In this document: in pieces, positions 1 through 15,305 of the stretch
How the letters are laid out: the number at the start of each line of letters is the position of its first letter
Position numbering within the stretch: position 1 is the first letter of the stretch
Virus record (IMG/VR): IMGVR_UViG_3300025012_000027
Location: 1 to 64,000 of that record
Length of the DNA stretch: 64,000 nt
Reading direction: 5' to 3' (one strand)
Position numbers and translations under genes: made by a program
Notes under the pieces: model-generated
Told to the model about the DNA's origin: nothing
Seen by the model: the letters and a program-made list of their open reading frames with translations, nothing else
Database searches by the model: none

Positions 1-1
1 T

Positions 2-58
2 TATCACTCTGCCGCCATTCACTTTTATGACGCGGGCAACGCATACCCTAATTCTTAA
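2..58 (+). CDS. C-terminal end of an upstream RCC1-repeat protein (partial, begins before window)
   Basis: Frame from nt 2 reads YHSAAIHFYDAGNAYPNS*, matching the YHTAAI blade end of the two downstream RCC1 proteins. Confidence 0.6.
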   Translation, partial: YHSAAIHFYDAGNAYPNS

Positions 59-79
59 TCACATTAATGGAAAATAATT

Positions 80-733
80 ATGTTCGTAATCGTACACAAT
101 AACTCAGTAATTCTAGGGCCTATGAGATGGAATCGGTATAGGTTTGAAAACGTCATTCAGGAAGAATGTGAACTATCTGTATCATTACCATCCAGTAATG
201 AGAAAGATCCATTGTTGCTGTCAGCTGATGTACGAATATTACCAGTTGAACCTCTACCTCTTCCAGAATTCAATTCGAAGATCGAGTTTCTGCACGGTCC
301 ATTCTGGGAATTTACAGATCAAAAAGCTATATCATCATTCACAGTACAGCGACTCCCGATAGACGCCGTGAAAAACAAATTAATCAGCGTTTGCGCGGAT
401 GAACGTTGGCGCAGAGAATCGGTTGGTGTAAAAACTAATATTCAGGGAGCAGACATAACTGTAGATACTCGCCGTGGTAATCGGGATATATTTGTTCAGA
501 AGTACCTACTGATGAATGAAAGTGATACTGTTCGGTGGAAGTTTCCAGAAGAATGGGCAACACTCTCTAAAGTAGATCTAGCCCAAATCGTTTCAGCTGG
601 TGCTGGTTATATCCAATCGCAATTTGATTGGGAATCTAGTATGGTCGATTCTATAAATGCTTGCAGCACCCTCGAAGAATTGGATGCATTGGTTATCGTA
701 GAACCGGTCAACGAAAACCGTAGGGTAGTATAA
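80..733 (+). CDS. DUF4376-domain tail-fibre-associated protein
   Basis: C-terminal ERWRRESVGV..TVDTRRGNR..VRWKF..QSQFDWE..INACSTLEELDA pattern typical of DUF4376. Confidence 0.65.
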   Translation: MFVIVHNNSVILGPMRWNRYRFENVIQEECELSVSLPSSNEKDPLLLSADVRILPVEPLPLPEFNSKIEFLHGPFWEFTDQKAISSFTVQRLPIDAVKNKLISVCADERWRRESVGVKTNIQGADITVDTRRGNRDIFVQKYLLMNESDTVRWKFPEEWATLSKVDLAQIVSAGAGYIQSQFDWESSMVDSINACSTLEELDALVIVEPVNENRRVV

Positions 734-1941
734 TGCCAATTGGAATAACAACGGGGTTTAAAAACTCATCGGGGGAAGACATCGGGGAGAAACTCGTCCC
801 CAAGAGTTATTTGATTGACCGGTATCCAGAATTGGTTGATACGTTTCGTTTTTCTGGATTATGGATGTGGGGTCATAATAACTATGGCGGACTAGGTGAT
901 AACTCTGTCATCCATAAAAGTTCTCCAATACAAACTATCGCTGGTGGAACGAACTGGAAAACGGTTTCTGGTAGTGGATATCACACATCTGCCATAAAAA
1001 CTGACGGTACTTTGTGGACGTGGGGCCATAATAACTATGGACAATTAGGTGATAACACTATTGATAATAAAAGTTCTCCAGTACAAACTATTGCAGGTGG
1101 AACGAACTGGAAGCAAGTATCTAGCGGTTGGTTTCACACATCTGCCATAAAAACTGACGGTACTTTGTGGACGTGGGGTCTTAATAATAATGGTCAATTA
1201 GGTGATAACTCTGTCATCCGTAAAAGTTCTCCAATACAAACTGTTGCTGGAGGAACGAACTGGAAAACGGTTTCTGGTAGTATATATCATACGGCTGCTA
1301 TAAAAACTGACGGTACTTTATGGACATGGGGTCGTAATAACTATGGTCAACTAGGTGATAGCACTGTTGCTAATAAAAGTTCCACCGTGCAAACTATTGC
1401 TGGAGGAACGAACTGGAAACTGGTTGATTGTGGTGCACATCACACATCTGCTATAAAAACTGACGGTACTTTGTGGCTGTGGGGTTACAATGGATACGGT
1501 CAACTAGGTGATAGCACTGTTGCTAGTAAAAGTTCTCCAGTGCAAACTGTCGCTGGTGGAACGAACTGGAAGTTGGTTGCTGGTGGTGCATATCATACGG
1601 CTGCCATTAAAACCGATGGTACTTTATGGACATGGGGTCGTAATAACTATGGTCAACTAGGTGATAACACTGATGCTAATAAAAGTTCTCCAGTACAAAC
1701 TATTGCAGGTGGAACGAACTGGAAACTAGTGGCCGGTGGATCATATCACACATCTGCTATAAAAACCGATGGTACTTTATGGCTGTGGGGTTACAATGGA
1801 TACGGTCAACTAGGTGATAGCACTGTTGCTAATAAAAGTTCCACCGTGCAAACTATTGCTGGAGGAACGAACTGGAAACTGGTTGATTGTGGTGGTTATC
1901 ACACTATAGCCATACGAGACGATTCAGACGACTATATATGA
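733..1941 (+). CDS. RCC1-repeat (7-blade beta-propeller) protein, probable receptor-binding/fibre-tip protein
   Basis: Seven 51-aa repeats HTxAIKTDGTLWxWGxNxYGQLGDxT..KSSPVQTIAGGTNWK. Confidence 0.85.
   Translation: MPIGITTGFKNSSGEDIGEKLVPKSYLIDRYPELVDTFRFSGLWMWGHNNYGGLGDNSVIHKSSPIQTIAGGTNWKTVSGSGYHTSAIKTDGTLWTWGHNNYGQLGDNTIDNKSSPVQTIAGGTNWKQVSSGWFHTSAIKTDGTLWTWGLNNNGQLGDNSVIRKSSPIQTVAGGTNWKTVSGSIYHTAAIKTDGTLWTWGRNNYGQLGDSTVANKSSTVQTIAGGTNWKLVDCGAHHTSAIKTDGTLWLWGYNGYGQLGDSTVASKSSPVQTVAGGTNWKLVAGGAYHTAAIKTDGTLWTWGRNNYGQLGDNTDANKSSPVQTIAGGTNWKLVAGGSYHTSAIKTDGTLWLWGYNGYGQLGDSTVANKSSTVQTIAGGTNWKLVDCGGYHTIAIRDDSDDYI
862..1914 (+). repeat. 153-bp coding tandem repeat (7 units)
   Basis: Near-identical units at 153-bp period; 1345-1435 is identical to 1804-1894. 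Confidence 0.9.
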
Positions 1942-2435
1942 TACACCCACTCGTTAAAATAATCACGGTCGATGGGTTCTTCACCCACGAGCAGGCGAAT
2001 TCGCTAGTCGCGTCAACATACAACCTCGAGTATGTCTCAACCGAGTTTGGAAAAGAAATACCAAACTTTAATCTGATATCACCTAACTTCAATGAATCTG
2101 CTTCGGCGATGTTGAATACATCGATAGAAGTTGATGAATCTAGGTCCGGGTTCTTTAGGCTGCCTGAGAATTTTATACATTTCGAAGGATTCGATAGCAC
2201 AGATGAATGGGTGTTTGCTGTAGCTCTGCAACAATCTACGTTCAACGTATTCGAGCATAAATCTGGAGCAACTACGGCTTTGCACGGACATAAATATAAC
2301 TATCGAGACCTGTTCCAGTGGGATTTAAAAATTAACTATGTGTTAGATCCTGGGCAAGGCGTACTGTTCAGACCGTGGTTATTTCATTCGTTCGATACTG
2401 GACTGATCCAAACATTTAGGGTAACTGAACGATGA
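1938..2435 (+). CDS. 2OG-Fe(II) oxygenase-like / DUF6445-like protein
   Basis: IITVDGFF start, IHFE, GVLFRPWLFHS motifs; ATG 1938 overlaps upstream TGA (ATGA). Confidence 0.5.
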   Translation: MIHPLVKIITVDGFFTHEQANSLVASTYNLEYVSTEFGKEIPNFNLISPNFNESASAMLNTSIEVDESRSGFFRLPENFIHFEGFDSTDEWVFAVALQQSTFNVFEHKSGATTALHGHKYNYRDLFQWDLKINYVLDPGQGVLFRPWLFHSFDTGLIQTFRVTER

Positions 2436-3604
2436 CAATTAATTTTAGAACAACGATTCAAGATCCCACCGGGGCTGGTAGTGATTTAGGAGATCTTTTC
2501 ATTCCTAGATCACTGTTTAGTGATGCTGGATTATGGACGTGGGGCCGTAATAGCTATGGTCAGTTAGGTGATAGCACTGGTGCTAGTAAAAGCTCTCCAG
2601 TACAAACTATCGCCGGTGGTACGAACTGGAAGCTGGTTGCTGGTGGTCGATATCACACAGCCGCCATAAAAACCGATGGTACTTTATGGTCGTGGGGTCG
2701 TAATACCTATGGCGAACTAGGTGATAACACCATCGCCCATAAAAGCTCTCCAGTACAAACTATCGCTGGAGGAACTAACTGGAAACTGGTGGCTAGCGGG
2801 TGGTTGCACACAGCCGCAATTAAAACCGATGGTACTTTATGGACATGGGGATATAATTACTATGGTACACTCGGTGATAACACTATTGCTAATAAAAGCT
2901 CACCAGTACAAACTATCGCTGGAGGAACGAACTGGAAACTGGTAGCTGGTGGCCGATATCACACAGCCGCAATTAAAACCGATGGTACTTTATGGCTGTG
3001 GGGTCGCAATAACTATGGTCAACTAGGTGATAACACTCGCGTCAGTAAAAGCTCTCCTGTACAAACTATAGATGATGAAGGAACCAACTGGAAATCTGTT
3101 TCAGGCGGGACCGCCCACACAGCCGCAATTAAAACCGATGGTACTTTGTGGCTGTGGGGTACTAATTATTATGGTACACTCGGTGATGAAACTATCATCG
3201 ATAAAAGCTCTCCTATACAAACTGTCGCCGGTGGCACGAACTGGAAACTGGTAGCTAGTGGTGATTATTATACTGCTGCCATTAAAACTGACGGTACTTT
3301 ATGGACATGGGGTCGCAATAACTATGGCTCTCTCGGTGACAACACTATTGCTCATAAAAGTTCTCCAATACAAACTATCGCTGGAGGAACGAACTGGAAG
3401 CAGGTTGAATGTGGAACAGATTACATAGCCGCCATTAAAACTGATGGTACTTTATGGACGTGGGGGGCTAATTTCTATGGTATGCTAGGTGATAACACTG
3501 ACATCAGTAAAAGTTCTCCCGTACAAACTATCGCTGGTGGAACGAACTGGAAGTTGATTGGTGGTGGCATGATGCATACTGTAGCCATAAGAGACGATTC
3601 ATAG
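2432..3604 (+). CDS. Second RCC1-repeat beta-propeller protein
   Basis: Seven repeats of the same 51-aa unit as 733..1941. Confidence 0.85.
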   Translation: MTINFRTTIQDPTGAGSDLGDLFIPRSLFSDAGLWTWGRNSYGQLGDSTGASKSSPVQTIAGGTNWKLVAGGRYHTAAIKTDGTLWSWGRNTYGELGDNTIAHKSSPVQTIAGGTNWKLVASGWLHTAAIKTDGTLWTWGYNYYGTLGDNTIANKSSPVQTIAGGTNWKLVAGGRYHTAAIKTDGTLWLWGRNNYGQLGDNTRVSKSSPVQTIDDEGTNWKSVSGGTAHTAAIKTDGTLWLWGTNYYGTLGDETIIDKSSPIQTVAGGTNWKLVASGDYYTAAIKTDGTLWTWGRNNYGSLGDNTIAHKSSPIQTIAGGTNWKQVECGTDYIAAIKTDGTLWTWGANFYGMLGDNTDISKSSPVQTIAGGTNWKLIGGGMMHTVAIRDDS

Positions 3605-3609
3605 TAGCA

Positions 3610-3615: not shown

Positions 3616-3635
3616 TAGTTTTACATTGGTATATT

Positions 3636-4199
3636 ATGAAAATAAATATTGGATCTGGTAGTAAGCGATATGATGGTATAATCAACATTGATTCTGATGC
3701 GGGGTCTAACCCAGATTTCGTTGTAAATCTCGAAACTGAGAATCTGCCGTTTGATGACAACAGTGTTGATTACGTCATGGCACATCACATTTTAGAGCAT
3801 TTAGGCGATGGATTCTTTCATTGCCTGAAAGAAATATATCGAGTGTGCAAACATGGTGCGATCATTGATGTGCGTGTCCCACATCCCCGACACGACACGT
3901 TCTTAATTGACCCCACACATAAACGCCCTATATATCCACATACGTTGGATATGTTTTCAAAGGCTCGTAATAAGAGAGACCTTGATAGCAACGGGTGTGA
4001 AACGCCGCTTGGATTTATCAATGATATTGACCTACAGGTGGTTGATCATAATTTTGTTTTAGACGAATACTGGATACAGAAATTCAAACATCTATCTGAG
4101 GATGAATGTGAGCATATTGCTAGATCTATGAATAACGTGATTCTCGAAATATCAATAAAACTGAAAGTGGTTAAGCAAAACAATACTCGCAGAGATTGA
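3636..4199 (+). CDS. Class I SAM-dependent methyltransferase (Methyltransf_11-like)
   Basis: INIGSG motif I, LPFDDNSVD, HILEHL, EIYRVCKHG, DPTH. Confidence 0.8.
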   Translation: MKINIGSGSKRYDGIINIDSDAGSNPDFVVNLETENLPFDDNSVDYVMAHHILEHLGDGFFHCLKEIYRVCKHGAIIDVRVPHPRHDTFLIDPTHKRPIYPHTLDMFSKARNKRDLDSNGCETPLGFINDIDLQVVDHNFVLDEYWIQKFKHLSEDECEHIARSMNNVILEISIKLKVVKQNNTRRD

Positions 4200-4206
4200 A
4201 TATACT

Positions 4207-5523
4207 ATGAATCCATTAGCAACAGTTGAGTTTTTTATACATATAAATCAGTTTGAAAAAGCTAAAATAGTTCTCGATTTATTAAAACCATATGCAAGAT
4301 CCGTGCAAGAGATTGATCAGTTAGGTAAGCTATATGCCGATATACGAGAATTTGCCGACACTCTCGAATTAGGGCAACGGATATATGAGTTAGTTGACCA
4401 CCCTCAAGCAAAGTATGATTCTAGAGTGAACATAATACGAGCATTGCTTAATCTGAATAAGCCAAATGAAGCTCTTGAACTCATTCTGATAAACGAACAA
4501 GAGCAGCCTGACGATCATCCAAATCAGATGGATAAGGCGATGTGTTTTTTCCTATTAGACCAAAAGGATTCTGGCGAAGCCATTCTTAGACAAATATTAT
4601 CTGAGCCGCACACTCAAGATATCGATAATCGGGTGAGGTTCAATCTTGGCACATATGACTTGCGCAACGGTAATTTTAAACAAGGCCTGCGAGAGGTTTT
4701 GCTAGGCGGCAGGAAACTTAACATATGGCATGAATTCAAGTTTCCAAAATCTCAATTGTGGGAAGGCAATCCGCAACCAGGCAAACGCATTCTCGTATGC
4801 GCTGAGGGTGGAATAGGAGATGAGATAATATCGGTTAGATTCATGAAGCATTTGCGCGATGCTGGGATGCTCCCGATTTGGTACACTGATAGAGAAGATA
4901 TTCGGACTATCTTCACTCGGAATGGTTTTGAAACAACCACTAACATAAGCATATTACCGGCCGACTGGTTATGGACGTATTCTATGCCTATACCATCATA
5001 TCTAGATCTATCAGAGGATGCTGTGTGGTATGGTCCATATATTTCACCTACCAATCAAACACCAAAATTATCCACTTCAGGAAAGAAGAAGATTGGTATA
5101 AAGTGTATGGGCAACCCTAAGTATGATCAAGATTTACATAGGACAGTACCTTTCATAGAATTGATAGACAGCATTCCAGATGAATATGAGATATACTCGT
5201 TTCATATAGATGAAGATTTCACCCACCCCAGAGTCATCCAGTTGAAAGATAAGATACACTCGTGGGATGATACCTTGGATTATATAACCCAAATGGATAT
5301 CATTGTTTCTAGCTGTACTTCTTTGATACATGCGGCGGGTGCTATGGGCAAATCATCGATCGTCATTGTGCCTATACTAACGTATTACACATGGGCAAAA
5401 CCTGGTCTGAGGTCTTTGTGGTATGGCGATAATTTACGGGTCTTGAGGCAGGTTGAATATGACAACTGGTCCGCTCCCCTTAATGAACTCAACAAAATAC
5501 TATGCCCGTCAAATACCGTATAA
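4207..5523 (+). CDS. TPR-repeat + glycosyltransferase family 9-like protein
   Basis: Helical N-terminus; WEG..GKRILVCAEGGIGDEI, MDIIVSSCTSLIHAAGAMG, WY..LRVLRQ motifs. Confidence 0.75.
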   Translation: MNPLATVEFFIHINQFEKAKIVLDLLKPYARSVQEIDQLGKLYADIREFADTLELGQRIYELVDHPQAKYDSRVNIIRALLNLNKPNEALELILINEQEQPDDHPNQMDKAMCFFLLDQKDSGEAILRQILSEPHTQDIDNRVRFNLGTYDLRNGNFKQGLREVLLGGRKLNIWHEFKFPKSQLWEGNPQPGKRILVCAEGGIGDEIISVRFMKHLRDAGMLPIWYTDREDIRTIFTRNGFETTTNISILPADWLWTYSMPIPSYLDLSEDAVWYGPYISPTNQTPKLSTSGKKKIGIKCMGNPKYDQDLHRTVPFIELIDSIPDEYEIYSFHIDEDFTHPRVIQLKDKIHSWDDTLDYITQMDIIVSSCTSLIHAAGAMGKSSIVIVPILTYYTWAKPGLRSLWYGDNLRVLRQVEYDNWSAPLNELNKILCPSNTV

Positions 5524-5858
5524 TAAATATCAACTTAACATCCTCGGTGTCCGATGCTCCTATAGCTGATGTGCCATGCAATGGGTGCATTAGGTGCTGT
5601 GAATTATTGACTCCCTTCCTAACCCCCGAAGAACTGAGTTCTGGCCTATACCCTATAAGTCTGATTCAACCGTCTGAAGATGCCGTGTTAGCAACACCTG
5701 ATATAGGCCCTCTGATTTCACTATATCGGAAGCCAGATGGTGGGTGTAGTATGCTAGTCGATGGACAGTGTACAATATATGACATTAGGCCAAAAGCGTG
5801 TCGACAATTCGATTGCCGTAAAGGACATCATCCCAAAATCCCCAACATGACGATATAA
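5502..5858 (+). CDS. YkgJ-family (CxxCxxCC) cysteine-cluster protein
   Basis: CNGCIRCC ... CSML..CTIYDIRPKACRQFDC. Confidence 0.8.
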   Translation: MPVKYRIININLTSSVSDAPIADVPCNGCIRCCELLTPFLTPEELSSGLYPISLIQPSEDAVLATPDIGPLISLYRKPDGGCSMLVDGQCTIYDIRPKACRQFDCRKGHHPKIPNMTI

Positions 5859-7108: not shown

Positions 7109-7203
7109 GCTTAAATAGTATGAGTAACTAATTGGATACCTTATGCGACTAACTCTAGAAGAAACACAATACCTGTTAGATGAATCTACTCAACATCTAA
7201 CCG
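7109..7203 (+). repeat. Copy 1 of late-promoter + 5'-gene repeat
   Basis: 92/95 nt identical to 15353-15447; contains TAAATA 7112-7117 and ATG 7143. Confidence 0.95.
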
Positions 7204-7244
7204 CGCGAGTTGCGGCAATCGATCCAGAAGGAGGTATACTGTGA
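7143..7244 (+). CDS. 33-aa chimeric mini-ORF (N-terminus of gene 15387 fused to unrelated tail); possibly a pseudogene/leader peptide
   Basis: MRLTLEETQYLLDESTQHLTARVAAIDPEGGIL*; its TGA overlaps the GTG start of 7241. Confidence 0.45.
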   Translation: MRLTLEETQYLLDESTQHLTARVAAIDPEGGIL

Positions 7245-8552: not shown

Positions 8553-9448
8553 GTTTGTATGTGCCTTTGCCGGATCAAGAAGTCGGCATTCTATCATATA
8601 AGCCAATATTGGATGAGTTAGACATCACAATTACGTCCATTAAAAATACATCGGCTTATGCTTTTCCTGTATCAAACAGAGGAACTAGCTACTGTGGGGA
8701 TCATCCTAAATACATGTCACTTGAGAGTCTAAATACTCTGACATATAAGAGTGAGCTACATAAAACAGGCATACTTACCATTCCGACAGAAATTGTTCAA
8801 GAAATTGGAGATACTTCTTTATATTTTTTCAAGCCAAATTCTATATTTAGCAACGAACTTGTAAGACGCCCAAGGGTTGCGAGCCCTATCGCCCAGTATG
8901 AAGTGACGTTTTCTGTAAATGAATTCAATGAGATCTATGTGTTTAATACATCGAGACACATATTTAATAATGCAGATACGTCTGGGGCTTGTGTACAGAC
9001 ATCTGAAAATAGTGTAGAATCCATCTATATGATAGATCAAGTGAGACAAGCTGTTATTAGATTAAACGTTCGTGGTGGCATACATAATGTGCAGTTTATA
9101 TATTATAATAACGAATTAGTTTTAATAGACTGGAATGCTAGACCACCAACAGTTCTTACCGAAGGTTTCGCAGCATATAACCATCCTAATATCATTAGTA
9201 CGGTAAGACACGCACTCGGACTCCCAATTCTGCCAAGAGAACCTATGTCTGTTATTTTTAGAGATTATTCGGATAATCCTATACCCGTTTCAAAACGGGA
9301 TCTTATCGTTAGTTTTGGACTACTTCCTAGAAAAGTTTGGGGTAAAGGGATTGATTATCCATTCATACGAGTCAGTGGGCTTGGATCTTCGGATGAAGAG
9401 CTGAATTCGAGATTTGATCAAATGGAACTGGCAGTATTTAGTAATTAA
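8540..9448 (+). CDS. ATP-grasp-fold protein (divergent)
   Basis: FFKP, YEVTF, GIHNVQFIYYNNELVLIDWNARP resemble ATP-grasp motifs. Confidence 0.6.
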   Translation: MASMSLYVPLPDQEVGILSYKPILDELDITITSIKNTSAYAFPVSNRGTSYCGDHPKYMSLESLNTLTYKSELHKTGILTIPTEIVQEIGDTSLYFFKPNSIFSNELVRRPRVASPIAQYEVTFSVNEFNEIYVFNTSRHIFNNADTSGACVQTSENSVESIYMIDQVRQAVIRLNVRGGIHNVQFIYYNNELVLIDWNARPPTVLTEGFAAYNHPNIISTVRHALGLPILPREPMSVIFRDYSDNPIPVSKRDLIVSFGLLPRKVWGKGIDYPFIRVSGLGSSDEELNSRFDQMELAVFSN

Positions 9449-9450: not shown

Positions 9451-10527
9451 ATGTTTTATTATTTTGATGATGGTACAAAATGTACATCGAAGATAGAAGC
9501 TATAAAATATGGTTTGGCGAAACAATTAACTCCGAAGTTTTATTATTACGATCACATCTATGAAAAATTAAATTGGAGTGTCGAACCATCTCAAAGTTTA
9601 GATTACTATTATAAAGAACAAGCTCAAAATATTAGAGATAATTATGATTATGTAATTTTAGCATATTCTGGTGGGTATGACTCAACCAATATACTTGAAA
9701 CCTTTCATTTCAATAATATAAAATTAGATAAGATATTGATCGTCGGCGCATTTAAACAAGATAGCTCATATGGAGTCGATGAAAACCATAATGGAGAATT
9801 GTATCATAACGCATTTCCATATGTAAAGGATCTTGGCTTGGACCATATCACTCAAGTTATAGACTATACAGAGTTATTCGATAGCACAAAAAACTTTAGT
9901 ATTTCAGTATATAACGAGAATTGGGTTGATACCATTGGAGCGTGGTTCAGTCCTCATAATTGGTTCTGGAAAGATGTAGAGAGGCACATTGTTCCACTAG
10001 AGTGGAGAGGTAAACGAGTCGCTCTAGTATTTGGTAAAGATAAACCCGGACTGTATCACAATGTTCATGCAACCCGTCGCGGTATAGGAATTCAAGGCGA
10101 TGCCCTTAATCCAACGGGATTTCATTTTAGAGACACGCCGTGTTTAAGTTACGCAGATACTAATGCAGATGAAAGTATTGACAGAGTAAACTTTTACTGG
10201 GATCCTGAAAACCCACAAATTTTATTAAAACAATTGCATGTGATTAAGAGAGTAACTGAAATAAATGAAATTGCTCCGCTCAAGTTACTAAATATAAATG
10301 AAATTGTGTACAGTCTCAAACGACCTTTGTTATTTAAGTCACCGAAGAGCGGTAGTAACTTATTTAGTCTTAGAGATGAATACTTAAAGACCAATAAGGC
10401 ATCTGATGTATTTTCTTTATATGCCGCTGGAATTAATAAGATAGACCGAGAAATAGGGGTAAGTAATATTGGTCCTATATTTTCCAAACATTATAGCATG
10501 CTAAGTGGCTTGCACGCGATAACGTAG
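9451..10527 (+). CDS. PP-loop (adenine nucleotide alpha-hydrolase-like) protein
   Basis: VILAYSGGYDSTNIL PP-loop. Confidence 0.65.
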   Translation: MFYYFDDGTKCTSKIEAIKYGLAKQLTPKFYYYDHIYEKLNWSVEPSQSLDYYYKEQAQNIRDNYDYVILAYSGGYDSTNILETFHFNNIKLDKILIVGAFKQDSSYGVDENHNGELYHNAFPYVKDLGLDHITQVIDYTELFDSTKNFSISVYNENWVDTIGAWFSPHNWFWKDVERHIVPLEWRGKRVALVFGKDKPGLYHNVHATRRGIGIQGDALNPTGFHFRDTPCLSYADTNADESIDRVNFYWDPENPQILLKQLHVIKRVTEINEIAPLKLLNINEIVYSLKRPLLFKSPKSGSNLFSLRDEYLKTNKASDVFSLYAAGINKIDREIGVSNIGPIFSKHYSMLSGLHAIT

Positions 10528-10537: not shown

Positions 10538-11527
10538 ATGACAATAAAAACTTCCGGGTCTCTTTCATTAAATGAAATCAATTCTGAATTTGGGAGAGGG
10601 TATAACTTAAACGCATATAGAGGCACTTCCTATTGGAATAGTAACGCTACTCTGGGTACGTTTTCAAGCGTAGCTATTTCAATCAATGATTTTTTTGGTA
10701 AGGCTCTATCTCGACCACCCATCACCGCTCAAGTATTGGTTGTGGGTGGTGGTGGAGGCGGCGGTTCTGGAACACATGATTCTGTTGGCGGTGGAGGGGG
10801 CGGTGGAGGGGGCGGTCAATTCTTATCATTTGATGTAACATTATACCCCGGTGCTCCAGCTTCAATTAGTATAGGGGGTGGTGGTGCCGGTGGATACTAT
10901 TACATCTACTATACCGGCCCTTATGGTGACCAAGCTAATTATGCGTATGTAGCAGGGAATACTGGTGGATCCAGTTCTGCAGTATTCAATGGATCTACAT
11001 ACACTGCGGTAGGGGGGCTATATGGTCACCAAAGATGGTATAATGGTGAAAGCTTTACTGTTGACCCAACCCCATATGTTGGTGGGGCAGGTGGTTCGGG
11101 TAATGGCGGGGGTGGGTATGCATCTGCAGGTGGATCAGACGGTATTAGAGCAGGCGGGGGTGGTGGTGGTATAGATGATCAATCGACAGCTGGAGTAGGC
11201 GGAGCGGGTCCGCTGTGGTTTAATGGGTCTAGATATTCGGGTGGTGGTGGTGGTGGTGCTGATGGGTCCGGTCAAGCTTCGGGTGGCGCAGGTGGCGGCG
11301 GAACTGGCGGGTCATCTATGAATGGAACGGCAGGCGCAGCCAATACCGGTGGTGGCGGAGGTGGTGGTGGGTCATCGGGTTTTGTAACCAATGCAGGGGC
11401 CGGTGGCTCAGGCATAGTGATCATTAGATATGTTAGCAGTTTCGCATTCTTCAGTGGTGGGTCAGCGTATTCATCTGGTGGCTACATATACCATGTGTTT
11501 ACGTCTAATGCGTCATTTACAACATAA
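10538..11527 (+). CDS. Glycine-rich tail-fibre adhesin (gp38-like architecture)
   Basis: N-terminal SGSLSLNEINSEFG..ISINDFFGK anchor; many poly-Gly runs; GSGIVIIRY..YHVFTS end. Confidence 0.7.
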   Translation: MTIKTSGSLSLNEINSEFGRGYNLNAYRGTSYWNSNATLGTFSSVAISINDFFGKALSRPPITAQVLVVGGGGGGGSGTHDSVGGGGGGGGGGQFLSFDVTLYPGAPASISIGGGGAGGYYYIYYTGPYGDQANYAYVAGNTGGSSSAVFNGSTYTAVGGLYGHQRWYNGESFTVDPTPYVGGAGGSGNGGGGYASAGGSDGIRAGGGGGGIDDQSTAGVGGAGPLWFNGSRYSGGGGGGADGSGQASGGAGGGGTGGSSMNGTAGAANTGGGGGGGGSSGFVTNAGAGGSGIVIIRYVSSFAFFSGGSAYSSGGYIYHVFTSNASFTT

Positions 11528-12345
11528 TGAATTCATATAATAATTGGATCACGTCTAATGTATCTCAACGATTGACTAATCCCTTAGCCAAATTAAAGTT
11601 AGACATGAAAGTTCCTCTATTCGAGCAAAGGAACTTTCATGAATGTGCATCTGAAGCCGCGCAGCTTATTGCAAAAACTCATGATAATATATATGTGGCA
11701 TTAAGTGGAGGTATGGATTCTGAGTATATTGTTAGAACTTTTCATAAAAACAACGTACCGTTCACCCCAATCATATTAGAATGTGGGAATGAGATAGAGA
11801 GAAGGTACGCTTTTAAAGTATGCGAAGAATTGCGGCTATCTCCTGTCGTTCTACACTTATCAGAAGAAGATATGGTAGATAAATTCTATGAGTCAATCCA
11901 CAAAAAACTTAATGGGGTGGGTTATCATGCTACATTGGTTCTAGCTATCGCAGAGTATGTATACAGTAAACGAGGGGTGTTAGTAACGGGGGATGGATTT
12001 TTTGGAGATGGTGATGAATTGGTTACCGATACTGAGTTTGCTTTATACAATGAATGGGATGATTATATAGACTCTTTAGTTGATATAGATAACATTGGGT
12101 TCTTTCTATATACCCCACAATTGTTATATTCGATGTTTCCTAAAACGTATACTGCATGGAATATTATCAAAACAGAGTTGTATGGTATTGAATATAGGCG
12201 CAAGATGCGCCCTAGGTACAGGGACGACACACTAAATAAACTGCACAGTATAAATTCTAAGGTGATTTATACTTTAGGGAATAATATTTGTAATGTTATT
12301 TATACGAAACAAGAAATTTTAGAAATTTTTAATACGAAGGAATGA
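11527..12345 (+). CDS. Second PP-loop (asparagine-synthase-like C domain) protein
   Basis: IYVALSGGMDSEYIV; LVTGDG. Confidence 0.65.
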   Translation: MNSYNNWITSNVSQRLTNPLAKLKLDMKVPLFEQRNFHECASEAAQLIAKTHDNIYVALSGGMDSEYIVRTFHKNNVPFTPIILECGNEIERRYAFKVCEELRLSPVVLHLSEEDMVDKFYESIHKKLNGVGYHATLVLAIAEYVYSKRGVLVTGDGFFGDGDELVTDTEFALYNEWDDYIDSLVDIDNIGFFLYTPQLLYSMFPKTYTAWNIIKTELYGIEYRRKMRPRYRDDTLNKLHSINSKVIYTLGNNICNVIYTKQEILEIFNTKE

Positions 12346-12352
12346 AATTATT

Positions 12353-13084
12353 ATGAAAAAACTTATAGCACTTGCATTATTGGCTATTTCAATTACATGC
12401 TCAGCTGCACCAATTGAGTTTGTTGTAACGGCATCTGCAGGGGGGCCTAATGATACCGTGACTAGAAAAATAGTAGAAAAAATCTCTACTGAAACTGATT
12501 TGACATTTGTTGTGGTGAATAAGCCGGGTGCTGCACATGTAATTGGCTATAACTTTACAATGAATAGTAAAAAACCCACATTAATTTTATCTACCCCTGA
12601 AATTGCGAATCATGACGTGTATTTACAATTAGATGAACTTTTCACAGTAGGGTATTTTACTAACACTATTTTTGTTTCAACAAAGTCAAATATCACAAAC
12701 ATTAATCAATTAGCTGAATTATCCAAACATAGAGACGTGAATTTTGGGAGTGGTGGTCCGGGAACGTATAGTCATAAAGCAATGGAAATTGTGTGTAAGT
12801 CAACTTTAAAATGTCTATCAGTACCATACAAATCTGGAGCAGAGGGTATGTTAGCCGTAATGACTGGGCAAATAGATACATACGCACTAGTATCATATGG
12901 TTCTTATCAATTTTTGAATAATGATAAGGTTAAAGCGATACATGAAATACAAATGCTGAAAAATGATAATTGGTTAAAGCTATTTGCTAAAAATGTATCT
13001 AATGAAGATAGAGAAAAGATTATGCGAGTGCTAAATTCTCTGAATAAAGAATTCTTCTACGAAATGGGATTTGAAAAACAATAG
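12353..13084 (+). CDS. tctC: Tripartite tricarboxylate transporter substrate-binding protein (TctC/Bug family), compact
   Basis: Signal peptide; PIEFVVTASAGGPND, VVNKPGA, FGSGGPG, VPYKSGAEG..AVMTGQID. Confidence 0.85.
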   Translation: MKKLIALALLAISITCSAAPIEFVVTASAGGPNDTVTRKIVEKISTETDLTFVVVNKPGAAHVIGYNFTMNSKKPTLILSTPEIANHDVYLQLDELFTVGYFTNTIFVSTKSNITNINQLAELSKHRDVNFGSGGPGTYSHKAMEIVCKSTLKCLSVPYKSGAEGMLAVMTGQIDTYALVSYGSYQFLNNDKVKAIHEIQMLKNDNWLKLFAKNVSNEDREKIMRVLNSLNKEFFYEMGFEKQ

Positions 13085-13125
13085 TGCTGCGGTGAGTAAT
13101 ATCCAGTAACATATAACTCTAAATA

Positions 13126-14409
13126 ATGACTTTTGCTATATTATTAGGCCTACTTGCAGGCATTTTTAGTGGTATTATACCTGCCGTAGGAAACTTTACT
13201 ACTATTATACTGTTCATACCATTATTAACTAAATTTAATGTGTATGAGTTGGTGTTGTTTTATATGACACTAACGGCGATAAGTCAATACGTCTGTAGCA
13301 TACCCGCTATATTGTTTGGTATACCTGGAGAAACCAGTAGTATTCCGGTCGTCCAAGAATCCAAAAATCTATCCTGGTCTGAAAAGGTCGAGGCCCTCGT
13401 AGGATGCGCATACGGTAGTTTTATAGGTACTGTGAGTGTGTTCGTATGCATTTACGTATTCTCGAGTCATATAGAGCGCATCGTGCAACCGATGTTCACC
13501 TCGTATATCCTAGCCAGTATGCTATGCGTGTCTTTAATAGCCATCTGCTTGGTGTCTAACAAATCTGCGTGGTTCAGTGTGTTCAATGCTATGTTAGGCG
13601 CAGGTCTTGCGCTGATTGGCATAAACACGTTTTTCAACATCCATTTTACGTTTGGTTTTAGCCTCTTCTCTGGAGGAATCCCAGATATCTTAGTCATCAC
13701 CTTTCTGCTAGGATTTCCGGAACTATATCAAAACGCTAAAATACAAGCGGTCAATCTTCAATTGACCCAAATCGATCACAGACCGTTTACAGCCATAGTT
13801 TTGCCTAAGTGGTATGTTAGTTTGAGTGCGACAGTGGTGGGGGCGCTCGGTGGTATTGTGCCCGGTCTTACCTTCATTGCTAGCAGCAGTATCGCACATA
13901 CTGTTTCAAAGTGGGCGAACGTGCCTGCGTTGCAGAGAATATTTGCTAGCGAATCTGCTAACAATGCTGGGTCTGTAACACAGCTATTACCGTTATTATT
14001 GTTTGCTATCCCGATATCAGGGGGTGAGGCACTTATTCTTATGATGTTGAACCAACAGGCATTCAGCGTGTCGACATATAGTTTCTCATCCATATACGAT
14101 TATGTTGGATACAATTTTCTCATTGTAAATATGTTGGGGTTAGCGATAACATTAGCATTATCGTATGCAGCGTCAAAAGTTACTCGCATCAATGTGCGTC
14201 ATATCGTCACTTTTGCGATGATTGTTATGGTGTCGTCTATTATGTATGAGAGTTTTAGTAAAGGGGTGTTTTTAAATTATGTTTTGATATCTGTATTCTT
14301 ATTACCTTTAGGGTGGGTATTACGCAACCGGAATAATATGCCGTTAGTGTTTTCTTTTTTAGTTTTTGATCGGCTCACAGAAGCTGTATATCGTGTTTTT
14401 ATTTTATGA
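13126..14409 (+). CDS. tctA: Tripartite tricarboxylate transporter large permease (TctA family)
   Basis: Polytopic membrane protein; GIIPAVG, PAILFGIPGETSS, GIVPGL, ASESANNAG, PLLLFAIP signatures. Confidence 0.85.
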   Translation: MTFAILLGLLAGIFSGIIPAVGNFTTIILFIPLLTKFNVYELVLFYMTLTAISQYVCSIPAILFGIPGETSSIPVVQESKNLSWSEKVEALVGCAYGSFIGTVSVFVCIYVFSSHIERIVQPMFTSYILASMLCVSLIAICLVSNKSAWFSVFNAMLGAGLALIGINTFFNIHFTFGFSLFSGGIPDILVITFLLGFPELYQNAKIQAVNLQLTQIDHRPFTAIVLPKWYVSLSATVVGALGGIVPGLTFIASSSIAHTVSKWANVPALQRIFASESANNAGSVTQLLPLLLFAIPISGGEALILMMLNQQAFSVSTYSFSSIYDYVGYNFLIVNMLGLAITLALSYAASKVTRINVRHIVTFAMIVMVSSIMYESFSKGVFLNYVLISVFLLPLGWVLRNRNNMPLVFSFLVFDRLTEAVYRVFIL

Positions 14410-15305
14410 GGACTCTTATGTTTTTAAAATTTATCGTTTCATGCGTTGTATTGTTTAGCAGCGCTTTCGCGTCTGCAGATTCTCTCAAATTAGTATCGCC
14501 GGGATCACAATCGGGCGGCTATATGATTCAACTAGCTGCATATGCTAAAGATCTGTCAAAGGACTATACGATTTCGGCGGTAGCGGCTGGTAATCTGTGT
14601 GAAGCTCTCAAACAAGTATCGGAAAATACTCCGACGCTGTTGCTATGGGGCAATGACTATGAAGCTGAGTATCGTCGAAATATCTGCGGTAATGTTCCGA
14701 ATAATCTAAACTTACGGGATATGATTAGGTTTAATACGAACTCATATATGGTTTGCTCGATTACTCACAAGAAGCCCGAGTTTCTAACAAAGACGGTCAC
14801 TGGTAGAATTGCTCATAGCGTTCCTCGCGACATGTTTACGGCAACTATCAATGAGATCAATGCGACCTTTGGGACTAGTTATGCAGCAATCCCATATAAC
14901 GGCACTGGATTGGCTAGATTAGCATTGGTTAGTGGTGAAGTAGATTATGCAATTCTCCCTAACGAGCATCGTCCATATATTGAACAAAAGGGCGGCGATT
15001 GTTTCTATGTGTTAGGCGATACCGGATCAAACTATCCGACGATCGAAGACTTGCAAAAGTTGGCCCCGACGAAAAAACTAACTCTATCGCTGAACCACGG
15101 ATTGTTTCTGTTGCATGCATCAAAGGCTGAACGAGAAAAAATTGTTACTACGCTGAAGGGGTTGCACGCTGACTGCAACAGCGGAATTGGCATGCATACA
15201 AAATGTGGTAAAGACTTTTTCCCTGTTTGGAATATTACTCCAACATTGGCATCGGCGTGGGAAGCTGAGGTGCTCTCATTTGGAAAGTTTTTAGCCAGTA
15301 AGTAA
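14406..15305 (+). CDS. Second, divergent TctC-like periplasmic binding protein
   Basis: Signal peptide; LVSPGSQSGG; IPYNGTGLARLALVSGEVDY. Confidence 0.6.
   Translation: MRTLMFLKFIVSCVVLFSSAFASADSLKLVSPGSQSGGYMIQLAAYAKDLSKDYTISAVAAGNLCEALKQVSENTPTLLLWGNDYEAEYRRNICGNVPNNLNLRDMIRFNTNSYMVCSITHKKPEFLTKTVTGRIAHSVPRDMFTATINEINATFGTSYAAIPYNGTGLARLALVSGEVDYAILPNEHRPYIEQKGGDCFYVLGDTGSNYPTIEDLQKLAPTKKLTLSLNHGLFLLHASKAEREKIVTTLKGLHADCNSGIGMHTKCGKDFFPVWNITPTLASAWEAEVLSFGKFLASK

What the first reader, a model, noticed from the sequence alone, without database searches (positions are those of the whole stretch)
1..15305. Two parallel 'DUF4376 + adhesin + tailoring enzymes' modules
Seen: module A has DUF4376 (80), at least three RCC1 propellers, an oxygenase-like protein, methyltransferase, TPR-GT9, YkgJ, sulfotransferase and APS kinase. 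Module B has DUF4376 (7923), ATP-grasp, PP-loop, Gly-rich adhesin, PP-loop and TctC/TctA/TctC. A third DUF4376 remnant lies at 18602. The enzyme genes are interleaved with and translationally coupled to the adhesin genes under late promoters. Inference: each module may be a self-contained alternative fibre tip whose enzymes chemically modify the virion or the host surface, i.e. a phage-encoded tailoring cluster for receptor-binding proteins rather than ordinary metabolic AMGs.
Basis: partly seen in the sequence, partly recalled or inferred. Interest (0 to 1): 0.75.

Follow-up and report, generated by a model that had tools for sequence, protein, structure and literature searches.

The report
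Phage propeller-fibre cassette with tailoring enzymes
An uncultivated T4-like groundwater phage carries a widely conserved gene cassette in which three RCC1 propeller proteins and a tail-fibre chaperone are interleaved with sugar-adding, hydroxylating, methylating and sulfating enzymes, next to an unrelated inserted cassette for solute uptake and ATP-dependent ligation; only the first fits the idea of a "tailored adhesin".

Summary
The 166-aa gene is a Fe/2OG oxygenase. The 438-aa gene is a TPR plus GT9 glycosyltransferase. The third RCC1 gene is split by the record's ends. Two sub-claims fail: there is no DUF4376 remnant at 18602, and T4 late promoters are not enriched.

The two "modules" are not parallel.

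**Module A** is a real, conserved cassette. Among 80 viral loci holding the TPR-GT9 gene, RCC1 occurs in at least 55, sulfotransferase in 60, methyltransferase in 48 and DUF4376 in 42. None occurs in 79 control loci. The linkage persists down to about 28% identity and is also present in the cultured Synechococcus phages S-SRM01 and BUCT-ZZ01. DUF4376 is sandwiched between RCC1 genes rather than heading the module.

**Module B** is a 7.6-kb insertion between direct repeats. Its conserved core is PP-loop enzymes plus signal-peptide-bearing TctC solute-binding proteins. In other phages this core recurs almost never with the Gly-rich protein (1 of 79) and never with the ATP-grasp. It looks like an uptake-and-ligation cassette that works in the infected cell.

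That module A's enzymes decorate the propellers or the fibre is plausible but unproven. Modification of the host surface remains a live rival.

The parts
2..58 (+). 3' tail of a third RCC1 propeller gene that is cut by the record's ends. Its 5' part is at genome 215809-216115, just after a Peptidase_S74 fibre gene at 215204-215809.
   Evidence: Translations read ..YHSAAIHFYDAGNAYPNS* at the window start and MAFLSPEG..LWTWGRNTYGGLGDNT.. at the genome end. S74 domain. Relatives have RCC1 at this position.
80..733 (+). DUF4376a: Tfa-type tail-fibre assembly chaperone or adaptor
   Evidence: PF14301 E 2e-7; phrog_10508 'tail fiber protein'. Flanked by RCC1 genes in relatives. Predicted complex with RCC1a gives weak support, 0.46 against a best control of 0.13.
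733..1941 (+). RCC1a: seven-blade RCC1-like propeller, putative distal fibre protein or adhesin
   Evidence: PF25390 E 7e-78; seven RCC1 repeats. 57% identical to S-SRM01 gp337.
1938..2435 (+). Fe(II)/2-oxoglutarate oxygenase (DSBH fold). Its ATG overlaps the RCC1a stop.
   Evidence: Model pLDDT 90.6. Foldseek top hits are HygX, OkaE, MINA53/NO66, PtlH and ALKBH. H82-x-E84...H151 is nearly invariant in 22 homologues.
2432..3604 (+). RCC1b: second complete seven-blade propeller
   Evidence: PF25390 E 1e-120.
3636..4199 (+). SAM-dependent methyltransferase
   Evidence: Methyltransf_11 E 9e-9. Present in 48 of 80 TPR loci.
4207..5523 (+). TPR plus GT9-like GT-B glycosyltransferase
   Evidence: Model pLDDT 79.9. 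Foldseek: OGT/SPINDLY E 1e-7, TibC E 1e-4. VIA-align: WaaF Z 14.7, GT9 3tov Z 14.6, TibC Z 14.2 over residues 174-436. 929 homologues.
5502..5858 (+). CxxCxxCC (YkgJ-family) metal-binding protein
   Evidence: PF03692 E 3e-8. Follows the TPR-GT9 gene in relatives.
5860..6651 (+). Sulfotransferase
   Evidence: Sulfotransfer_3 E 4e-14 and Sulfotransfer_1 E 7e-9. Present in 60 of 80 TPR loci.
6658..7092 (+). Short P-loop kinase, APS-kinase-like
   Evidence: APS_kinase E 6e-9 over profile positions 5-92 of 152; Walker A GLPGSGKT. Present in 24 of 80 TPR loci.
7109..7203 (+). Direct repeat R1: a copy of the leader and first codons of gene 15387-17636
   Evidence: 97% identical over 95 nt to 15353-15447. 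Only three copies exist in the whole genome.
7241..7759 (+). DUF7338 membrane protein, a small cassette between R1 and R2
   Evidence: PF24027 E 7e-11. Hydrophobic N-terminus.
7782..7867 (+). Direct repeat R2, a diverged copy that forms the left border of module B
   Evidence: The junction is covered by contigs from two further samples.
7923..8552 (+). DUF4376b: C-terminal Tfa domain, plus an N-terminal ~70 aa resembling a small protein family ('c6') that precedes PP-loop genes in other phages
   Evidence: PF14301 E 2e-15. hhalign to the c6 family gives probability 47%, E 2e-4; DUF4376a gives none.
8540..9448 (+). ATP-grasp ligase
   Evidence: ESM Atlas features 0.96 to ATP-grasp_3/_4 clusters; structure TM 0.72-0.77 to PurK and ATP-grasp models. 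Absent from 79 PP-loop loci.
9451..10527 (+). PP-loop ATP pyrophosphatase, a phage-specific family
   Evidence: SGGYDS motif invariant in 20 homologues. 365 homologues. Atlas neighbours are viral, some carrying QueC or Asn_synthase.
10538..11527 (+). Glycine-rich protein, putative fibre or adhesin
   Evidence: Gly_rich_2 E 1e-14. A homologue sits next to the PP-loop gene only in L012 among the first four PP-loop contexts read (L012-L015), and in 1 of 79 viral loci.
11527..12345 (+). Second PP-loop protein
   Evidence: SGGMDS motif. Asn_synthase E 3.5e-4, 20.8 bits against a cut-off of 21. Follows PP-loop1 in relatives.
12353..13084 (+). TctC-type solute-binding protein with a signal peptide
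   Evidence: PF03401 E 6e-9. N-terminus MKKLIALALLAISITCSAAP. The family profile hits solved TTT binding proteins at E 7e-55.
13126..14409 (+). TctA-type permease, a short phage form
   Evidence: PF01970 E 7e-39 over profile positions 2-412 of 423. Rare relatives of 417-443 aa lie next to PP-loop and TctC-like genes.
14406..15305 (+). Second, diverged TctC-like solute-binding protein with a signal peptide
   Evidence: hhalign to the phage TctC profile gives probability 90.5%. Signal peptide. A homologue lies next to TctA in L175.
15353..15447 (+). Direct repeat R3: the right border of module B and the true start of gene 15387-17636

Best explanation
The 15.3 kb holds two unrelated cassettes inside one co-directional late gene block. 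The phage is an uncultivated 216-kb T4-like phage from groundwater and sediment metagenomes, and its genome has no psbA.

**Cassette A** runs from the genome end through window 7092. It is an ancient, conserved unit with this gene order: S74-type fibre, RCC1 propeller, DUF4376 chaperone, RCC1 propeller, Fe/2OG oxygenase, RCC1 propeller, methyltransferase, TPR-GT9 glycosyltransferase, CxxCxxCC protein, sulfotransferase, APS-kinase-like kinase.

The most likely mechanism is inferred, not shown:
- The propellers are distal fibre proteins or adhesins, folded or mounted with the help of the Tfa-type chaperone. The chaperone's variable N-terminal domain contacts blades 6-7.
- The enzymes build a decorated glycan on a protein substrate held by the TPR arm. 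The substrate is most probably the propellers or the fibre.
- The proposed order is hydroxylation, then glycosylation by the GT9 domain, then methylation, then sulfation with PAPS supplied through the kinase.

**Cassette B** (7782-15352) was inserted between duplicated copies of the 5' end of the next gene. Its conserved core is PP-loop ATP pyrophosphatases plus exported TctC-type binding proteins, here with a TctA permease. This core is a separate uptake-and-ligation cassette that acts in the infected cell. The DUF4376b, ATP-grasp and Gly-rich genes are local additions in this phage.
For: **Shown for cassette A**
- Domain and fold assignments.
- Synteny in five long metagenomic contigs and in S-SRM01, BUCT-ZZ01 and a marine single-cell virus.
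- Co-occurrence in 80 TPR-GT9 loci, each against 0 of 79 control loci: RCC1 at least 55, sulfotransferase 60, methyltransferase 48, DUF4376 42, oxygenase 38.
- In the 42 loci with full flanks: RCC1 37, sulfotransferase 35, DUF4376 30. 268 of 273 genes are co-directional.
- After dereplication at 50% identity there are 12 clusters. RCC1 is in 10, DUF4376 in 9 and sulfotransferase in 9.
- DUF4376 is flanked by RCC1 genes: 38 of 43 upstream, 35 of 43 downstream.
- In some relatives RCC1 is fused into ORFs of more than 2,200 aa, and in BUCT-ZZ01 it follows the tail-fibre gene.
- An S74-fibre homologue is in 24 of 80 TPR loci against 1 of 79 control loci.
- Predicted complex of RCC1a with DUF4376a: score 0.46, best control 0.13, verdict 'weak support'.
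- DUF4376 is the Tfa chaperone domain in the literature (PMC7882524, PMC10579305).
- The nearest solved folds of the catalytic domain include TibC, which heptosylates an adhesin.

**Shown for cassette B**
- 95-nt repeats at 97% identity, unique to this region of the genome.
- 169 PP-loop paralogues in 78 loci and 75 TctC-like genes in 52 of 79 loci. Gly-rich occurs in 1, ATP-grasp in 0, TctA in 2.
- 97% of the TctC-like proteins have an N-terminal hydrophobic stretch typical of a signal peptide, against 3% of the PP-loop proteins.
- The phage TctC profile hits solved TTT binding proteins at E 7e-55.
- TctA relatives sit next to PP-loop and TctC-like genes in L175 and L176.
Against: - No proteomic or structural evidence places the RCC1 proteins in any virion. 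No modification has been observed.
- GT9 is best known for LPS-core heptosyltransferases, and those gave the top VIA-align rows (WaaF, WaaC). Cyanophage literature reads comparable enzyme sets as host cell-wall modification genes (PMC12801897).
- The top structural neighbours of the 2OG oxygenase are small-molecule enzymes (HygX, OkaE).
- The predicted chaperone-propeller complex passed only weakly.
- For cassette B no substrate is known. In about 17 loci, some of them near-identical contigs, a small protein related to DUF4376b's N-terminus directly precedes the PP-loop gene. In most of these (about 11-12) a fibre-like gene lies two ORFs further upstream. A link to fibres is therefore not fully excluded.
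Confidence: 0.5

Rival explanations
1. Cassette A's enzymes are host-surface modification genes (LPS core, EPS or S-layer glycan). They would be expressed to alter receptors on the infected cell, for example to stop superinfection or the loss of progeny on debris. The RCC1 genes are then merely neighbours in a hypervariable fibre region.
For: The catalytic domain's best structural matches are the LPS heptosyltransferases WaaF and WaaC. Relatives add GT1, GT9, carbamoyltransferase, a sugar epimerase and a second sulfotransferase, which is typical of polysaccharide tailoring. The literature interprets similar sets in large cyanophages this way (PMC12801897).
Against: The linkage to RCC1 and DUF4376 is far tighter than expected for chance neighbours. 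The oxygenase lies between two RCC1 genes, and the order is kept down to about 28% identity in 10 of 12 deep clusters. The GT9 domain is fused to a TPR arm, as in the protein glycosyltransferases OGT and SPINDLY. TibC shows that GT9 enzymes can target adhesins.
Confidence: 0.27
2. One reading: two parallel, self-contained alternative fibre tips. Each would be headed by a DUF4376 protein, and each would have its own enzymes that modify its adhesin (RCC1 in A, the Gly-rich protein in B).
For: Both regions contain a DUF4376 protein, a putative adhesin and enzymes in tight same-strand packing. In L012 a Gly-rich homologue directly precedes the PP-loop pair. A DUF4376b-like N-domain family precedes PP-loop genes in about 17 loci.
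Against: The two DUF4376 proteins share only 27% identity over the C-terminal domain. Among 79 PP-loop loci, Gly-rich occurs in 1 and ATP-grasp in 0. The PP-loop/TctC core usually lies between PhoH/PDDEXK and cell-wall-hydrolase genes, not in fibre modules. TctC-like proteins are exported and TctA is a permease. Module B is a repeat-bracketed insertion.
Confidence: 0.1
3. Cassette A makes a diffusible or cell-bound sulfated, methylated glycoconjugate. The RCC1 propellers are non-structural intracellular or secreted proteins that bind or present it.
For: Relatives carry sulfotransferase, methyltransferase, carbamoyltransferase and kinase genes, a Nod-factor-like tailoring set. The RCC1 proteins have no fibre-like shaft and only a ~40-aa N-terminal extension.
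Against: The RCC1 proteins have no signal peptide. The cassette always sits in the late structural block beside fibre, baseplate or neck genes. RCC1 is fused into giant ORFs, and a Tfa-type chaperone sits between the RCC1 genes.
Confidence: 0.08

Closest known systems
Tail-fibre assembly (Tfa) chaperones with a DUF4376 C-terminal domain: Mu U/TfaMu, the gene downstream of the Campylobacter CJIE1 H-fibre, Alteromonas phage V22 gp27 and A5 gp9
   Same: The same Pfam domain lies at the C-terminus with a variable N-terminal half. The gene sits directly beside the fibre or adhesin gene it presumably serves.
   Different: Here the flanking partners are monomer-like seven-blade RCC1 propellers, not trimeric fibres, and the chaperone lies between two of them. 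Binding has only weak computational support.
Bacterial autotransporter heptosyltransferases (TibC/TibA, AAH/AIDA-I), GT9 family
   Same: A GT9-type GT-B fold (Z 14.2 to TibC) encoded next to a putative adhesin. This is a precedent for GT9 enzymes decorating adhesins.
   Different: The phage enzyme carries an N-terminal TPR arm. No Pfam Glyco_transf_9 hit passes threshold. The TibC-like dodecamer and iron site were not examined. The substrate is unknown.
TPR-tethered protein O-glycosyltransferases (OGT, Xanthomonas XcOGT, Arabidopsis SPINDLY)
   Same: The overall architecture is a TPR superhelix followed by a GT-B catalytic domain. These are the best whole-chain Foldseek hits, E 1e-7.
   Different: At domain level the catalytic domain resembles GT9 more than GT41. 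Identity is about 10%.
Phage-encoded virion glycosylation in mycobacteriophages (Freeman et al. 2023, cited in PMC12619734 and PMC12801897)
   Same: Glycosyltransferase genes sit among structural genes, with the idea that the virion itself is the substrate.
   Different: In that system capsid and tail-tube C-termini are glycosylated and this was shown by mass spectrometry. Here the candidates are fibre-tip propellers, nothing has been measured, and oxygenase, methyltransferase, sulfotransferase and kinase genes are added.
Cell-wall or LPS modification gene sets of large cyanomyoviruses (S-SCSM2R, S-SCSM1, P-SSM2; PMC12801897)
   Same: Clusters of glycosyltransferases, epimerases and TPR proteins in T4-like phage genomes.
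   Different: Those sets are read as host-surface auxiliary genes. They have not been described as syntenic with RCC1 propellers and a Tfa chaperone.
Tripartite tricarboxylate transporters (TctABC; Bug-family binding proteins BugD, Bug27, terephthalate-binding protein) and phage-borne binding proteins such as PstS (the PstS comparison is from my own knowledge)
   Same: The TctC-like proteins match solved TTT binding proteins over their full length (E 7e-55) and have signal peptides. TctA is a full-length permease domain. tctA has been noted as a putative viral auxiliary gene (PMC4164917).
   Different: No TctB was found. The binding proteins occur in multiple paralogues paired with phage-specific PP-loop enzymes, an association I did not find described in the library.

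Membership tests
DUF4376 / Tfa tail-fibre assembly chaperone | C-terminal DUF4376 (PF14301) domain above Pfam's cut-off | tested here: met
   31.7 bits (80-733) and 57.5 bits (7923-8552) against a cut-off of 25.
DUF4376 / Tfa tail-fibre assembly chaperone | Encoded directly beside the fibre or adhesin gene it serves | tested here: met
   For DUF4376a, RCC1 is immediately upstream in 38 of 43 relatives and immediately downstream in 35 of 43. For DUF4376b the neighbours are an ATP-grasp gene and a repeat, so this is not met for that copy.
DUF4376 / Tfa tail-fibre assembly chaperone | Binds its fibre or adhesin through the N-terminal domain | tested here: inconclusive
   Complex prediction gave 0.46 against a best control of 0.13, verdict 'weak support'. 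The mark was reached by 58 of 80 solved complexes and 2 of 110 mismatched pairs, but scores of 0.60 or under are weak. The interface uses DUF4376a residues 3-24, 72-75 and 93-100.
RCC1-like seven-blade propeller | Seven RCC1 repeats and an RCC1-like domain above cut-off | tested here: met
   PF25390 at 262.9 and 403.6 bits against a cut-off of 150. Seven RCC1 stretches in each protein. Twelve 153-nt DNA repeat units.
Phage receptor-binding protein / virion component (for the RCC1 proteins) | Present in purified virions and binds the host surface | not testable with these tools
   Context only: late structural block, Tfa neighbour, fusion to giant ORFs.
GT9 glycosyltransferase | GT-B fold closest to GT9 structures | tested here: met
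   VIA-align Z 14.7 (WaaF 1psw), 14.6 (3tov), 14.2 (TibC) and 13.8 (WaaC) over residues ~190-434.
GT9 glycosyltransferase | Match to the Pfam Glyco_transf_9 model | tested here: not met
   No PF01075 hit at E <= 0.01 for 4207-5523. Only ESM-feature neighbours carry it.
OGT/SPINDLY-type TPR glycosyltransferase | N-terminal TPR superhelix fused to a GT-B catalytic domain | tested here: met
   Helices 3-175, then an alpha/beta region 190-432. Foldseek E 1e-7 to XcOGT and SPY. This shows shared architecture only. GT41 membership was not shown.
Fe(II)/2-oxoglutarate oxygenase | Double-stranded beta-helix fold with an H-x-D/E...H metal triad | tested here: met
   pLDDT 90.6; the top 50 Foldseek hits are all 2OG oxygenases. 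H82, E84 and H151 are nearly invariant. Pfam hits are only weak.
Sulfotransferase | Pfam sulfotransferase domain above cut-off | tested here: met
   Sulfotransfer_3 at 53.7 bits (cut-off 27) and Sulfotransfer_1 at 36 bits (cut-off 22).
APS kinase (CysC) | Full-length APS_kinase domain with a Walker A motif | tested here: inconclusive
   36.6 bits against a cut-off of 21.1 and Walker A GLPGSGKT. However, only profile positions 5-92 of 152 are matched in a 144-aa protein, and other P-loop kinase families score nearby.
PP-loop ATP pyrophosphatase | SGGxDS PP-loop motif | tested here: met
   SGGYDS and SGGMDS are present. S73, G74, G75 and D77 are invariant in 20 homologues.
PP-loop ATP pyrophosphatase | Match to a curated PP-loop family model above cut-off | tested here: not met
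   PP-loop1 has no Pfam or NCBIfam hit. PP-loop2 scores 20.8 bits for Asn_synthase against a cut-off of 21.
Tripartite tricarboxylate transporter (TctABC) | TctA permease and an exported TctC binding protein | tested here: met
   TctA 134 bits; TctC1 36.2 bits (cut-off 27); signal peptides on both TctC-like proteins. Family profile against solved TTT binding proteins gives E 7e-55.
Tripartite tricarboxylate transporter (TctABC) | Small TctB membrane subunit | tested here: not met
   No ORF between 12353 and 15305 other than TctC1, TctA and TctC2-like. No TctB hit among the ORFs scanned. A TctB elsewhere in the genome was not sought.
T4-type late transcription unit | TATAAATA late promoters upstream of the genes | tested here: not met
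   5 matches in 64 kb against 5.2 expected, none in an upstream gap of the modules.

The most novel reading that the evidence does not exclude
A widespread family of T4-like phages, including cultured Synechococcus phages, post-translationally builds a hydroxylation-dependent, methylated and sulfated glycan on its own RCC1-propeller receptor-binding proteins. It would do so with a phage-encoded TPR-GT9 enzyme set. This would be the first sulfated glycoprotein adhesin described in a phage, with a dedicated virus-encoded tailoring pathway. Separately, the PP-loop/TctC cassette would be an undescribed phage pathway that imports a carboxylate and ligates it inside the infected cell.
Probability: 0.3. 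Interest if true: 0.8.

Novelty: new variant of a known kind. Interest (0 to 1): 0.6.

Why it matters
Host range in T4-like phages is set by fibre-tip proteins. A conserved, phage-encoded pathway that chemically decorates those proteins would add a layer of specificity and of immune or defence evasion. That layer would be invisible to sequence-based prediction of receptor-binding proteins.

The cassette is common. The TPR-GT9 gene has 929 homologues, many of them on contigs of 100-270 kb. It is also present in two cultured Synechococcus phages, so the idea can be tested directly by virion proteomics.

The work also corrects the picture of module B. It reveals a second recurrent phage cassette of PP-loop paralogues paired with exported TctC-type binding proteins. 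Its function is unknown. It would otherwise be filed as scattered auxiliary metabolic genes.

Tried and rejected
**Searches that found nothing useful**
- A megablast of 1-15305 against the phage collection found nothing.
- Single-protein scans of viral contigs with the ATP-grasp and with the 749-aa protein found no relatives.
- An exact scan for the repeat core found no other genome.
- PDB sequence searches with the PP-loop profile, the TPR profile, the oxygenase profile, the DUF4376a profile, the Gly-rich protein and the second TctC-like protein gave only noise.
- NCBIfam added nothing to Pfam.

It was redone with permitted rows only.

**Ideas tested and dropped**
- The 'cyanophage' assumption was tested. 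The genome has no psbA, and the DNA is held by groundwater and sediment metagenomes. The host is therefore left open.
- I looked for population variants lacking module B. Contigs from four runs show equal depth on both sides (20.8 and 20.9) and no joint. The 95-nt repeat is only a branch point of the assembly graph. This does not exclude rare variants.
- The literature library held nothing on RCC1 propellers as phage fibre proteins, nor on PP-loop/TctC pairs in phages.

**Ideas left untested**
- I considered that the CxxCxxCC protein might be related to the flagellin methylase FliB. That is my recollection only. NCBIfam gave no hit, so I do not rely on it.

Full report
**What the window is**

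The window is the first 64 kb of a single 216,115-bp viral record. CheckV rates the record complete. PHROG hits to baseplate wedge and other T4-type structural proteins mark it as a T4-like myovirus. Its baseplate protein is under 30% identical to any cultured phage. The genome has no psbA. Its DNA is held by groundwater and sediment metagenomes from two studies. The host is therefore unknown and need not be a cyanobacterium.

**Checking the observation**

All ORFs from 80 to 15305 lie on the + strand. Their boundaries overlap by 1-22 nt or are separated by 1-41 nt. Pfam confirms these calls:
- DUF4376 at 80-733 and 7923-8552
- RCC1 propellers at 733-1941 and 2432-3604
- a Methyltransf_11 enzyme
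- a CxxCxxCC protein
- a sulfotransferase
- an APS-kinase-like P-loop kinase (N-terminal half of the profile only)
- a Gly_rich_2 protein
- TctC
- TctA

Genes that Pfam missed were settled by other means:
- The gene between the two RCC1 genes gives a model with pLDDT 90.6. Its 50 best Foldseek matches are all Fe/2OG oxygenases, and H-x-E...H is nearly invariant in 22 homologues.
- The 438-aa protein is a TPR superhelix (1-170) followed by a GT-B domain. Whole-chain Foldseek hits are OGT, XcOGT and SPINDLY (E 1e-7). Domain-level VIA-align hits are GT9 enzymes: WaaF at Z 14.7, 3tov at 14.6, the adhesin heptosyltransferase TibC at 14.2 and WaaC at 13.8.
- The ATP-grasp is supported by ESM Atlas features and structure.
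- The two PP-loop proteins are supported by invariant SGGxDS motifs.
- The last TctC-like protein is supported by a profile comparison (90.5% probability) and a signal peptide.

The record's ends cut a third RCC1 gene. Its 5' part is at 215809-216115 and its last 18 codons are at window 2-58, directly after a Peptidase_S74 fibre gene.

Two sub-claims fail:
- The 'DUF4376 remnant at 18602' is a 25-aa ORF with no detectable similarity. A family HMM finds only two copies in the six-frame genome.
- The canonical T4 late promoter TATAAATA is at chance frequency, and none lies upstream of these genes.

**Module A is a conserved cassette**

The TPR-GT9 protein has 929 homologues. More than 100 are 68-77% identical, and several lie on contigs of 137-274 kb.

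Five such contigs show the same gene order as the window:
1. fibre gene with an S74 domain
2. RCC1
3. DUF4376
4. RCC1
5. a ~168-aa oxygenase
6. RCC1
7. sulfotransferase (in some)
8. methyltransferase
9. TPR-GT9
10. CxxCxxCC
11. sulfotransferase and/or APS-kinase-like kinase

Some contigs add a second methyltransferase, GT9, GT1, a carbamoyltransferase and a second sulfotransferase.

Cultured and single-cell relatives share parts of the cassette:
- S-SRM01 has a looser version downstream of its baseplate and distal long-tail-fibre genes.
- BUCT-ZZ01 has a tail-fibre gene, then (one small ORF on) an RCC1-containing 700-aa protein, then a TPR homologue.
- A marine single-cell virus also links RCC1, TPR and sulfotransferase.

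I then fetched 80 viral loci by the TPR-GT9 profile and 79 by the PP-loop profile as mutual controls. Counts in the TPR set, each against zero in the PP-loop set:

| Family | TPR loci (of 80) |
|---|---|
| RCC1 | at least 55 |
| Sulfotransferase | 60 |
| Methyltransferase | 48 |
| DUF4376a | 42 |
| Oxygenase | 38 |
| CxxCxxCC | 23 |
| Kinase | 24 |

Further measures:
- Among the 42 loci with full flanks, RCC1 is in 37, sulfotransferase in 35 and DUF4376 in 30. 268 of 273 genes are co-directional with the TPR-GT9 gene.
- After dereplication at 50% identity there are 12 clusters. RCC1 remains in 10, DUF4376 in 9 and sulfotransferase in 9.
- DUF4376a-type genes have an RCC1 gene immediately upstream in 38 of 43 cases and immediately downstream in 35 of 43. 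Intergenic distances are -24 to +25 nt.
- An S74-fibre homologue is found in 24 of 80 TPR loci against 1 of 79 controls.

**How module A most likely works**

In the literature DUF4376 is the C-terminal domain of tail-fibre assembly chaperones. Examples are Mu U, the gene downstream of the Campylobacter CJIE1 H-fibre, and Alteromonas V22 gp27. These are encoded beside their fibre gene (PMC7882524, PMC10579305). The module is therefore not 'headed' by DUF4376. The chaperone sits among the propellers.

A complex prediction of RCC1a with DUF4376a scored 0.46 against a best control of 0.13. The tool's verdict was 'weak support'. The mark was reached by 58 of 80 solved complexes and 2 of 110 mismatched pairs, but passes at or below 0.60 are weak. 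The predicted interface joins the chaperone's N-terminal domain to blades 6-7. That agrees with how Tfa proteins are described, but it is not proof.

The enzyme set reads as a tailoring pathway: oxygenase, TPR-tethered GT9, methyltransferase, sulfotransferase and a kinase. The TPR arm and the TibC precedent favour a protein substrate. The interleaving with RCC1 genes points to the propellers or the fibre as that substrate.

All of this is inference. Nothing here shows that the propellers are virion proteins or that they are modified. GT9 is also the LPS-core heptosyltransferase family, and comparable sets in cyanomyoviruses are read as host cell-wall modification genes (PMC12801897). I put about 0.6 on the propellers being virion adhesins. 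I put about 0.45 on the enzymes acting on virion proteins rather than on the host surface.

**Module B is something else**

A 95-nt direct repeat occurs at 7109-7203 and 15353-15447 (97% identity). A diverged third copy is at 7782-7867. These are the only three copies in the genome. Each copy contains CTTAAATAG, an ATG and the first ~20 codons of the 749-aa gene that starts at 15387. The DUF7338 gene and the 7.6-kb module B therefore sit between duplicated 5' ends of that gene. This is the signature of cassette insertion.

Contigs from two further samples cover the R2 junction at 99% identity or more. Depth is equal on both sides, and no deletion variant was seen.

In relatives of module A, module B is absent. 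What follows there is NUDIX, neck (gp13/14/15), terminase and sheath genes.

The PP-loop protein has 365 homologues. Their contexts show a different conserved cassette:
- two adjacent PP-loop genes, further PP-loop paralogues and TctC-like genes. There are 169 PP-loop genes in 78 loci and 75 TctC-like genes in 52 of 79 loci.
- often a fatty-acid-hydroxylase-like protein, a radical SAM/SPASM enzyme and 2OG oxygenases.
- a usual position between PhoH/PDDEXK genes and a cell-wall hydrolase gene.

Against the 79 PP-loop loci, the Gly-rich protein occurs in 1, the ATP-grasp in 0, a DUF4376 in 1 and TctA in 2.

The phage TctC-like family matches solved TTT binding proteins over its full length (E 7e-55). 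97% of its members have an N-terminal hydrophobic stretch typical of a signal peptide, against 3% of the PP-loop proteins. Both window copies have clear signal peptides, and TctA is a multi-pass permease. The rare short phage-type TctA proteins also sit next to PP-loop and TctC-like genes.

The simplest reading is an uptake-and-ligation cassette in the infected cell. Exported binding proteins, here with their own permease, would bring in a carboxylate. Cytoplasmic adenylating enzymes (PP-loop, and here also ATP-grasp) would then act on it. The substrate is unknown. I hold this mechanism at about 0.45.

One observation keeps a thin link to fibres alive. In about 17 loci, some of them near-identical contigs, a 128-145-aa protein directly precedes the PP-loop gene. 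It resembles the N-terminal 70 residues of DUF4376b by hhalign (probability 47%, E 2e-4) and shows no match to DUF4376a. In most of these loci (about 11-12) a fibre-like gene lies two ORFs further upstream.

**Comparison with what is known, and novelty**

The individual parts belong to known families. Virion glycosylation by phage enzymes is established in mycobacteriophages. What I did not find described in the library is either of two things:
- the conserved cassette that couples RCC1 propellers and a Tfa chaperone with a TPR-GT9, a 2OG oxygenase, a methyltransferase, a sulfotransferase and a kinase
- the PP-loop/TctC cassette

I rate the finding as a new variant of a known kind, of moderate to good interest. 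It is directly testable in S-SRM01 and BUCT-ZZ01.

Noticed in passing
window 7109-7203, 7782-7867, 15353-15447: Three copies of a repeat that holds CTTAAATAG, an ATG and the first ~20 codons of the 749-aa gene. They bracket the DUF7338 gene and module B, and leave two short truncated ORFs (32 and 30 aa) at R1 and R2. This looks like a recombination hotspot for cassette insertion. There are no other copies in the genome and none in viral contigs.
   Followed up: yes
window 1-58 and genome 215809-216115 (L002:19694-20000): The record begins and ends inside an RCC1 gene made of 153-nt repeats. The assembly probably broke in the repeats, so the middle of this gene is missing from the record.
   Followed up: partly
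L016-L094 (for example L016, L021, L041); also L012-L015: There is a widespread cassette in large aquatic phages: two to five PP-loop paralogues alternating with exported TctC-type binding proteins. It often carries a fatty-acid-hydroxylase-like protein, a radical SAM/SPASM enzyme and 2OG oxygenases, and lies between PhoH/PDDEXK and a cell-wall hydrolase. Its function is unknown and it deserves its own study.
   Followed up: partly
L008:11667-21232 and L009:1830-11395: A 259-kb relative extends module A with Methyltransf_24, GT9, a NodU-like carbamoyltransferase, a HAD hydrolase, a second sulfotransferase and GT1. This set resembles Nod-factor or polysaccharide decoration enzymes.
   Followed up: no
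L157:2273-9952, L172:3095-9970, L150:6496-9975, L127:2334-6236: In some relatives the RCC1 gene downstream of DUF4376 is part of an ORF of 1,159 to about 2,560 aa. That size is typical of virion fibre or decoration proteins.
   Followed up: no
window 19169-19198: A perfect sigma-70 consensus (TTGACA, 16 nt, TATAAT, with an extended -10 TG; 12 of 12) overlaps a 10-bp hairpin followed by T-rich sequence, just upstream of the small gene at 19177-19410. It may mark a switch from the late block to an early or middle unit.
   Followed up: no
window 18655-19161: A 168-aa protein with a weak match to YiiX-family permuted papain-like enzymes (NCBIfam E 1.7e-4). This is the gene nearest the supposed 'DUF4376 remnant'.
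   Followed up: no
window 15387-18526: The 749-aa and 297-aa proteins downstream of module B have no family assignment beyond a sub-threshold Pfam LRV repeat match, and no relatives in viral contigs. The 749-aa gene's 5' end is the unit that was duplicated.
   Followed up: partly
whole genome (G000): The genome has no psbA, and its DNA is found in groundwater and sediment metagenomes. The phage is T4-like but probably not a cyanophage, although module A is shared with Synechococcus phages.
   Followed up: partly
L010:641-2453 and L011:517-2353: In two relatives a weak TctC-like gene and a weak Porin_4 (possibly Gly-rich) gene lie a few kb upstream of module A. TctC-like genes therefore also occur near this cassette in other genomes.
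   Followed up: no
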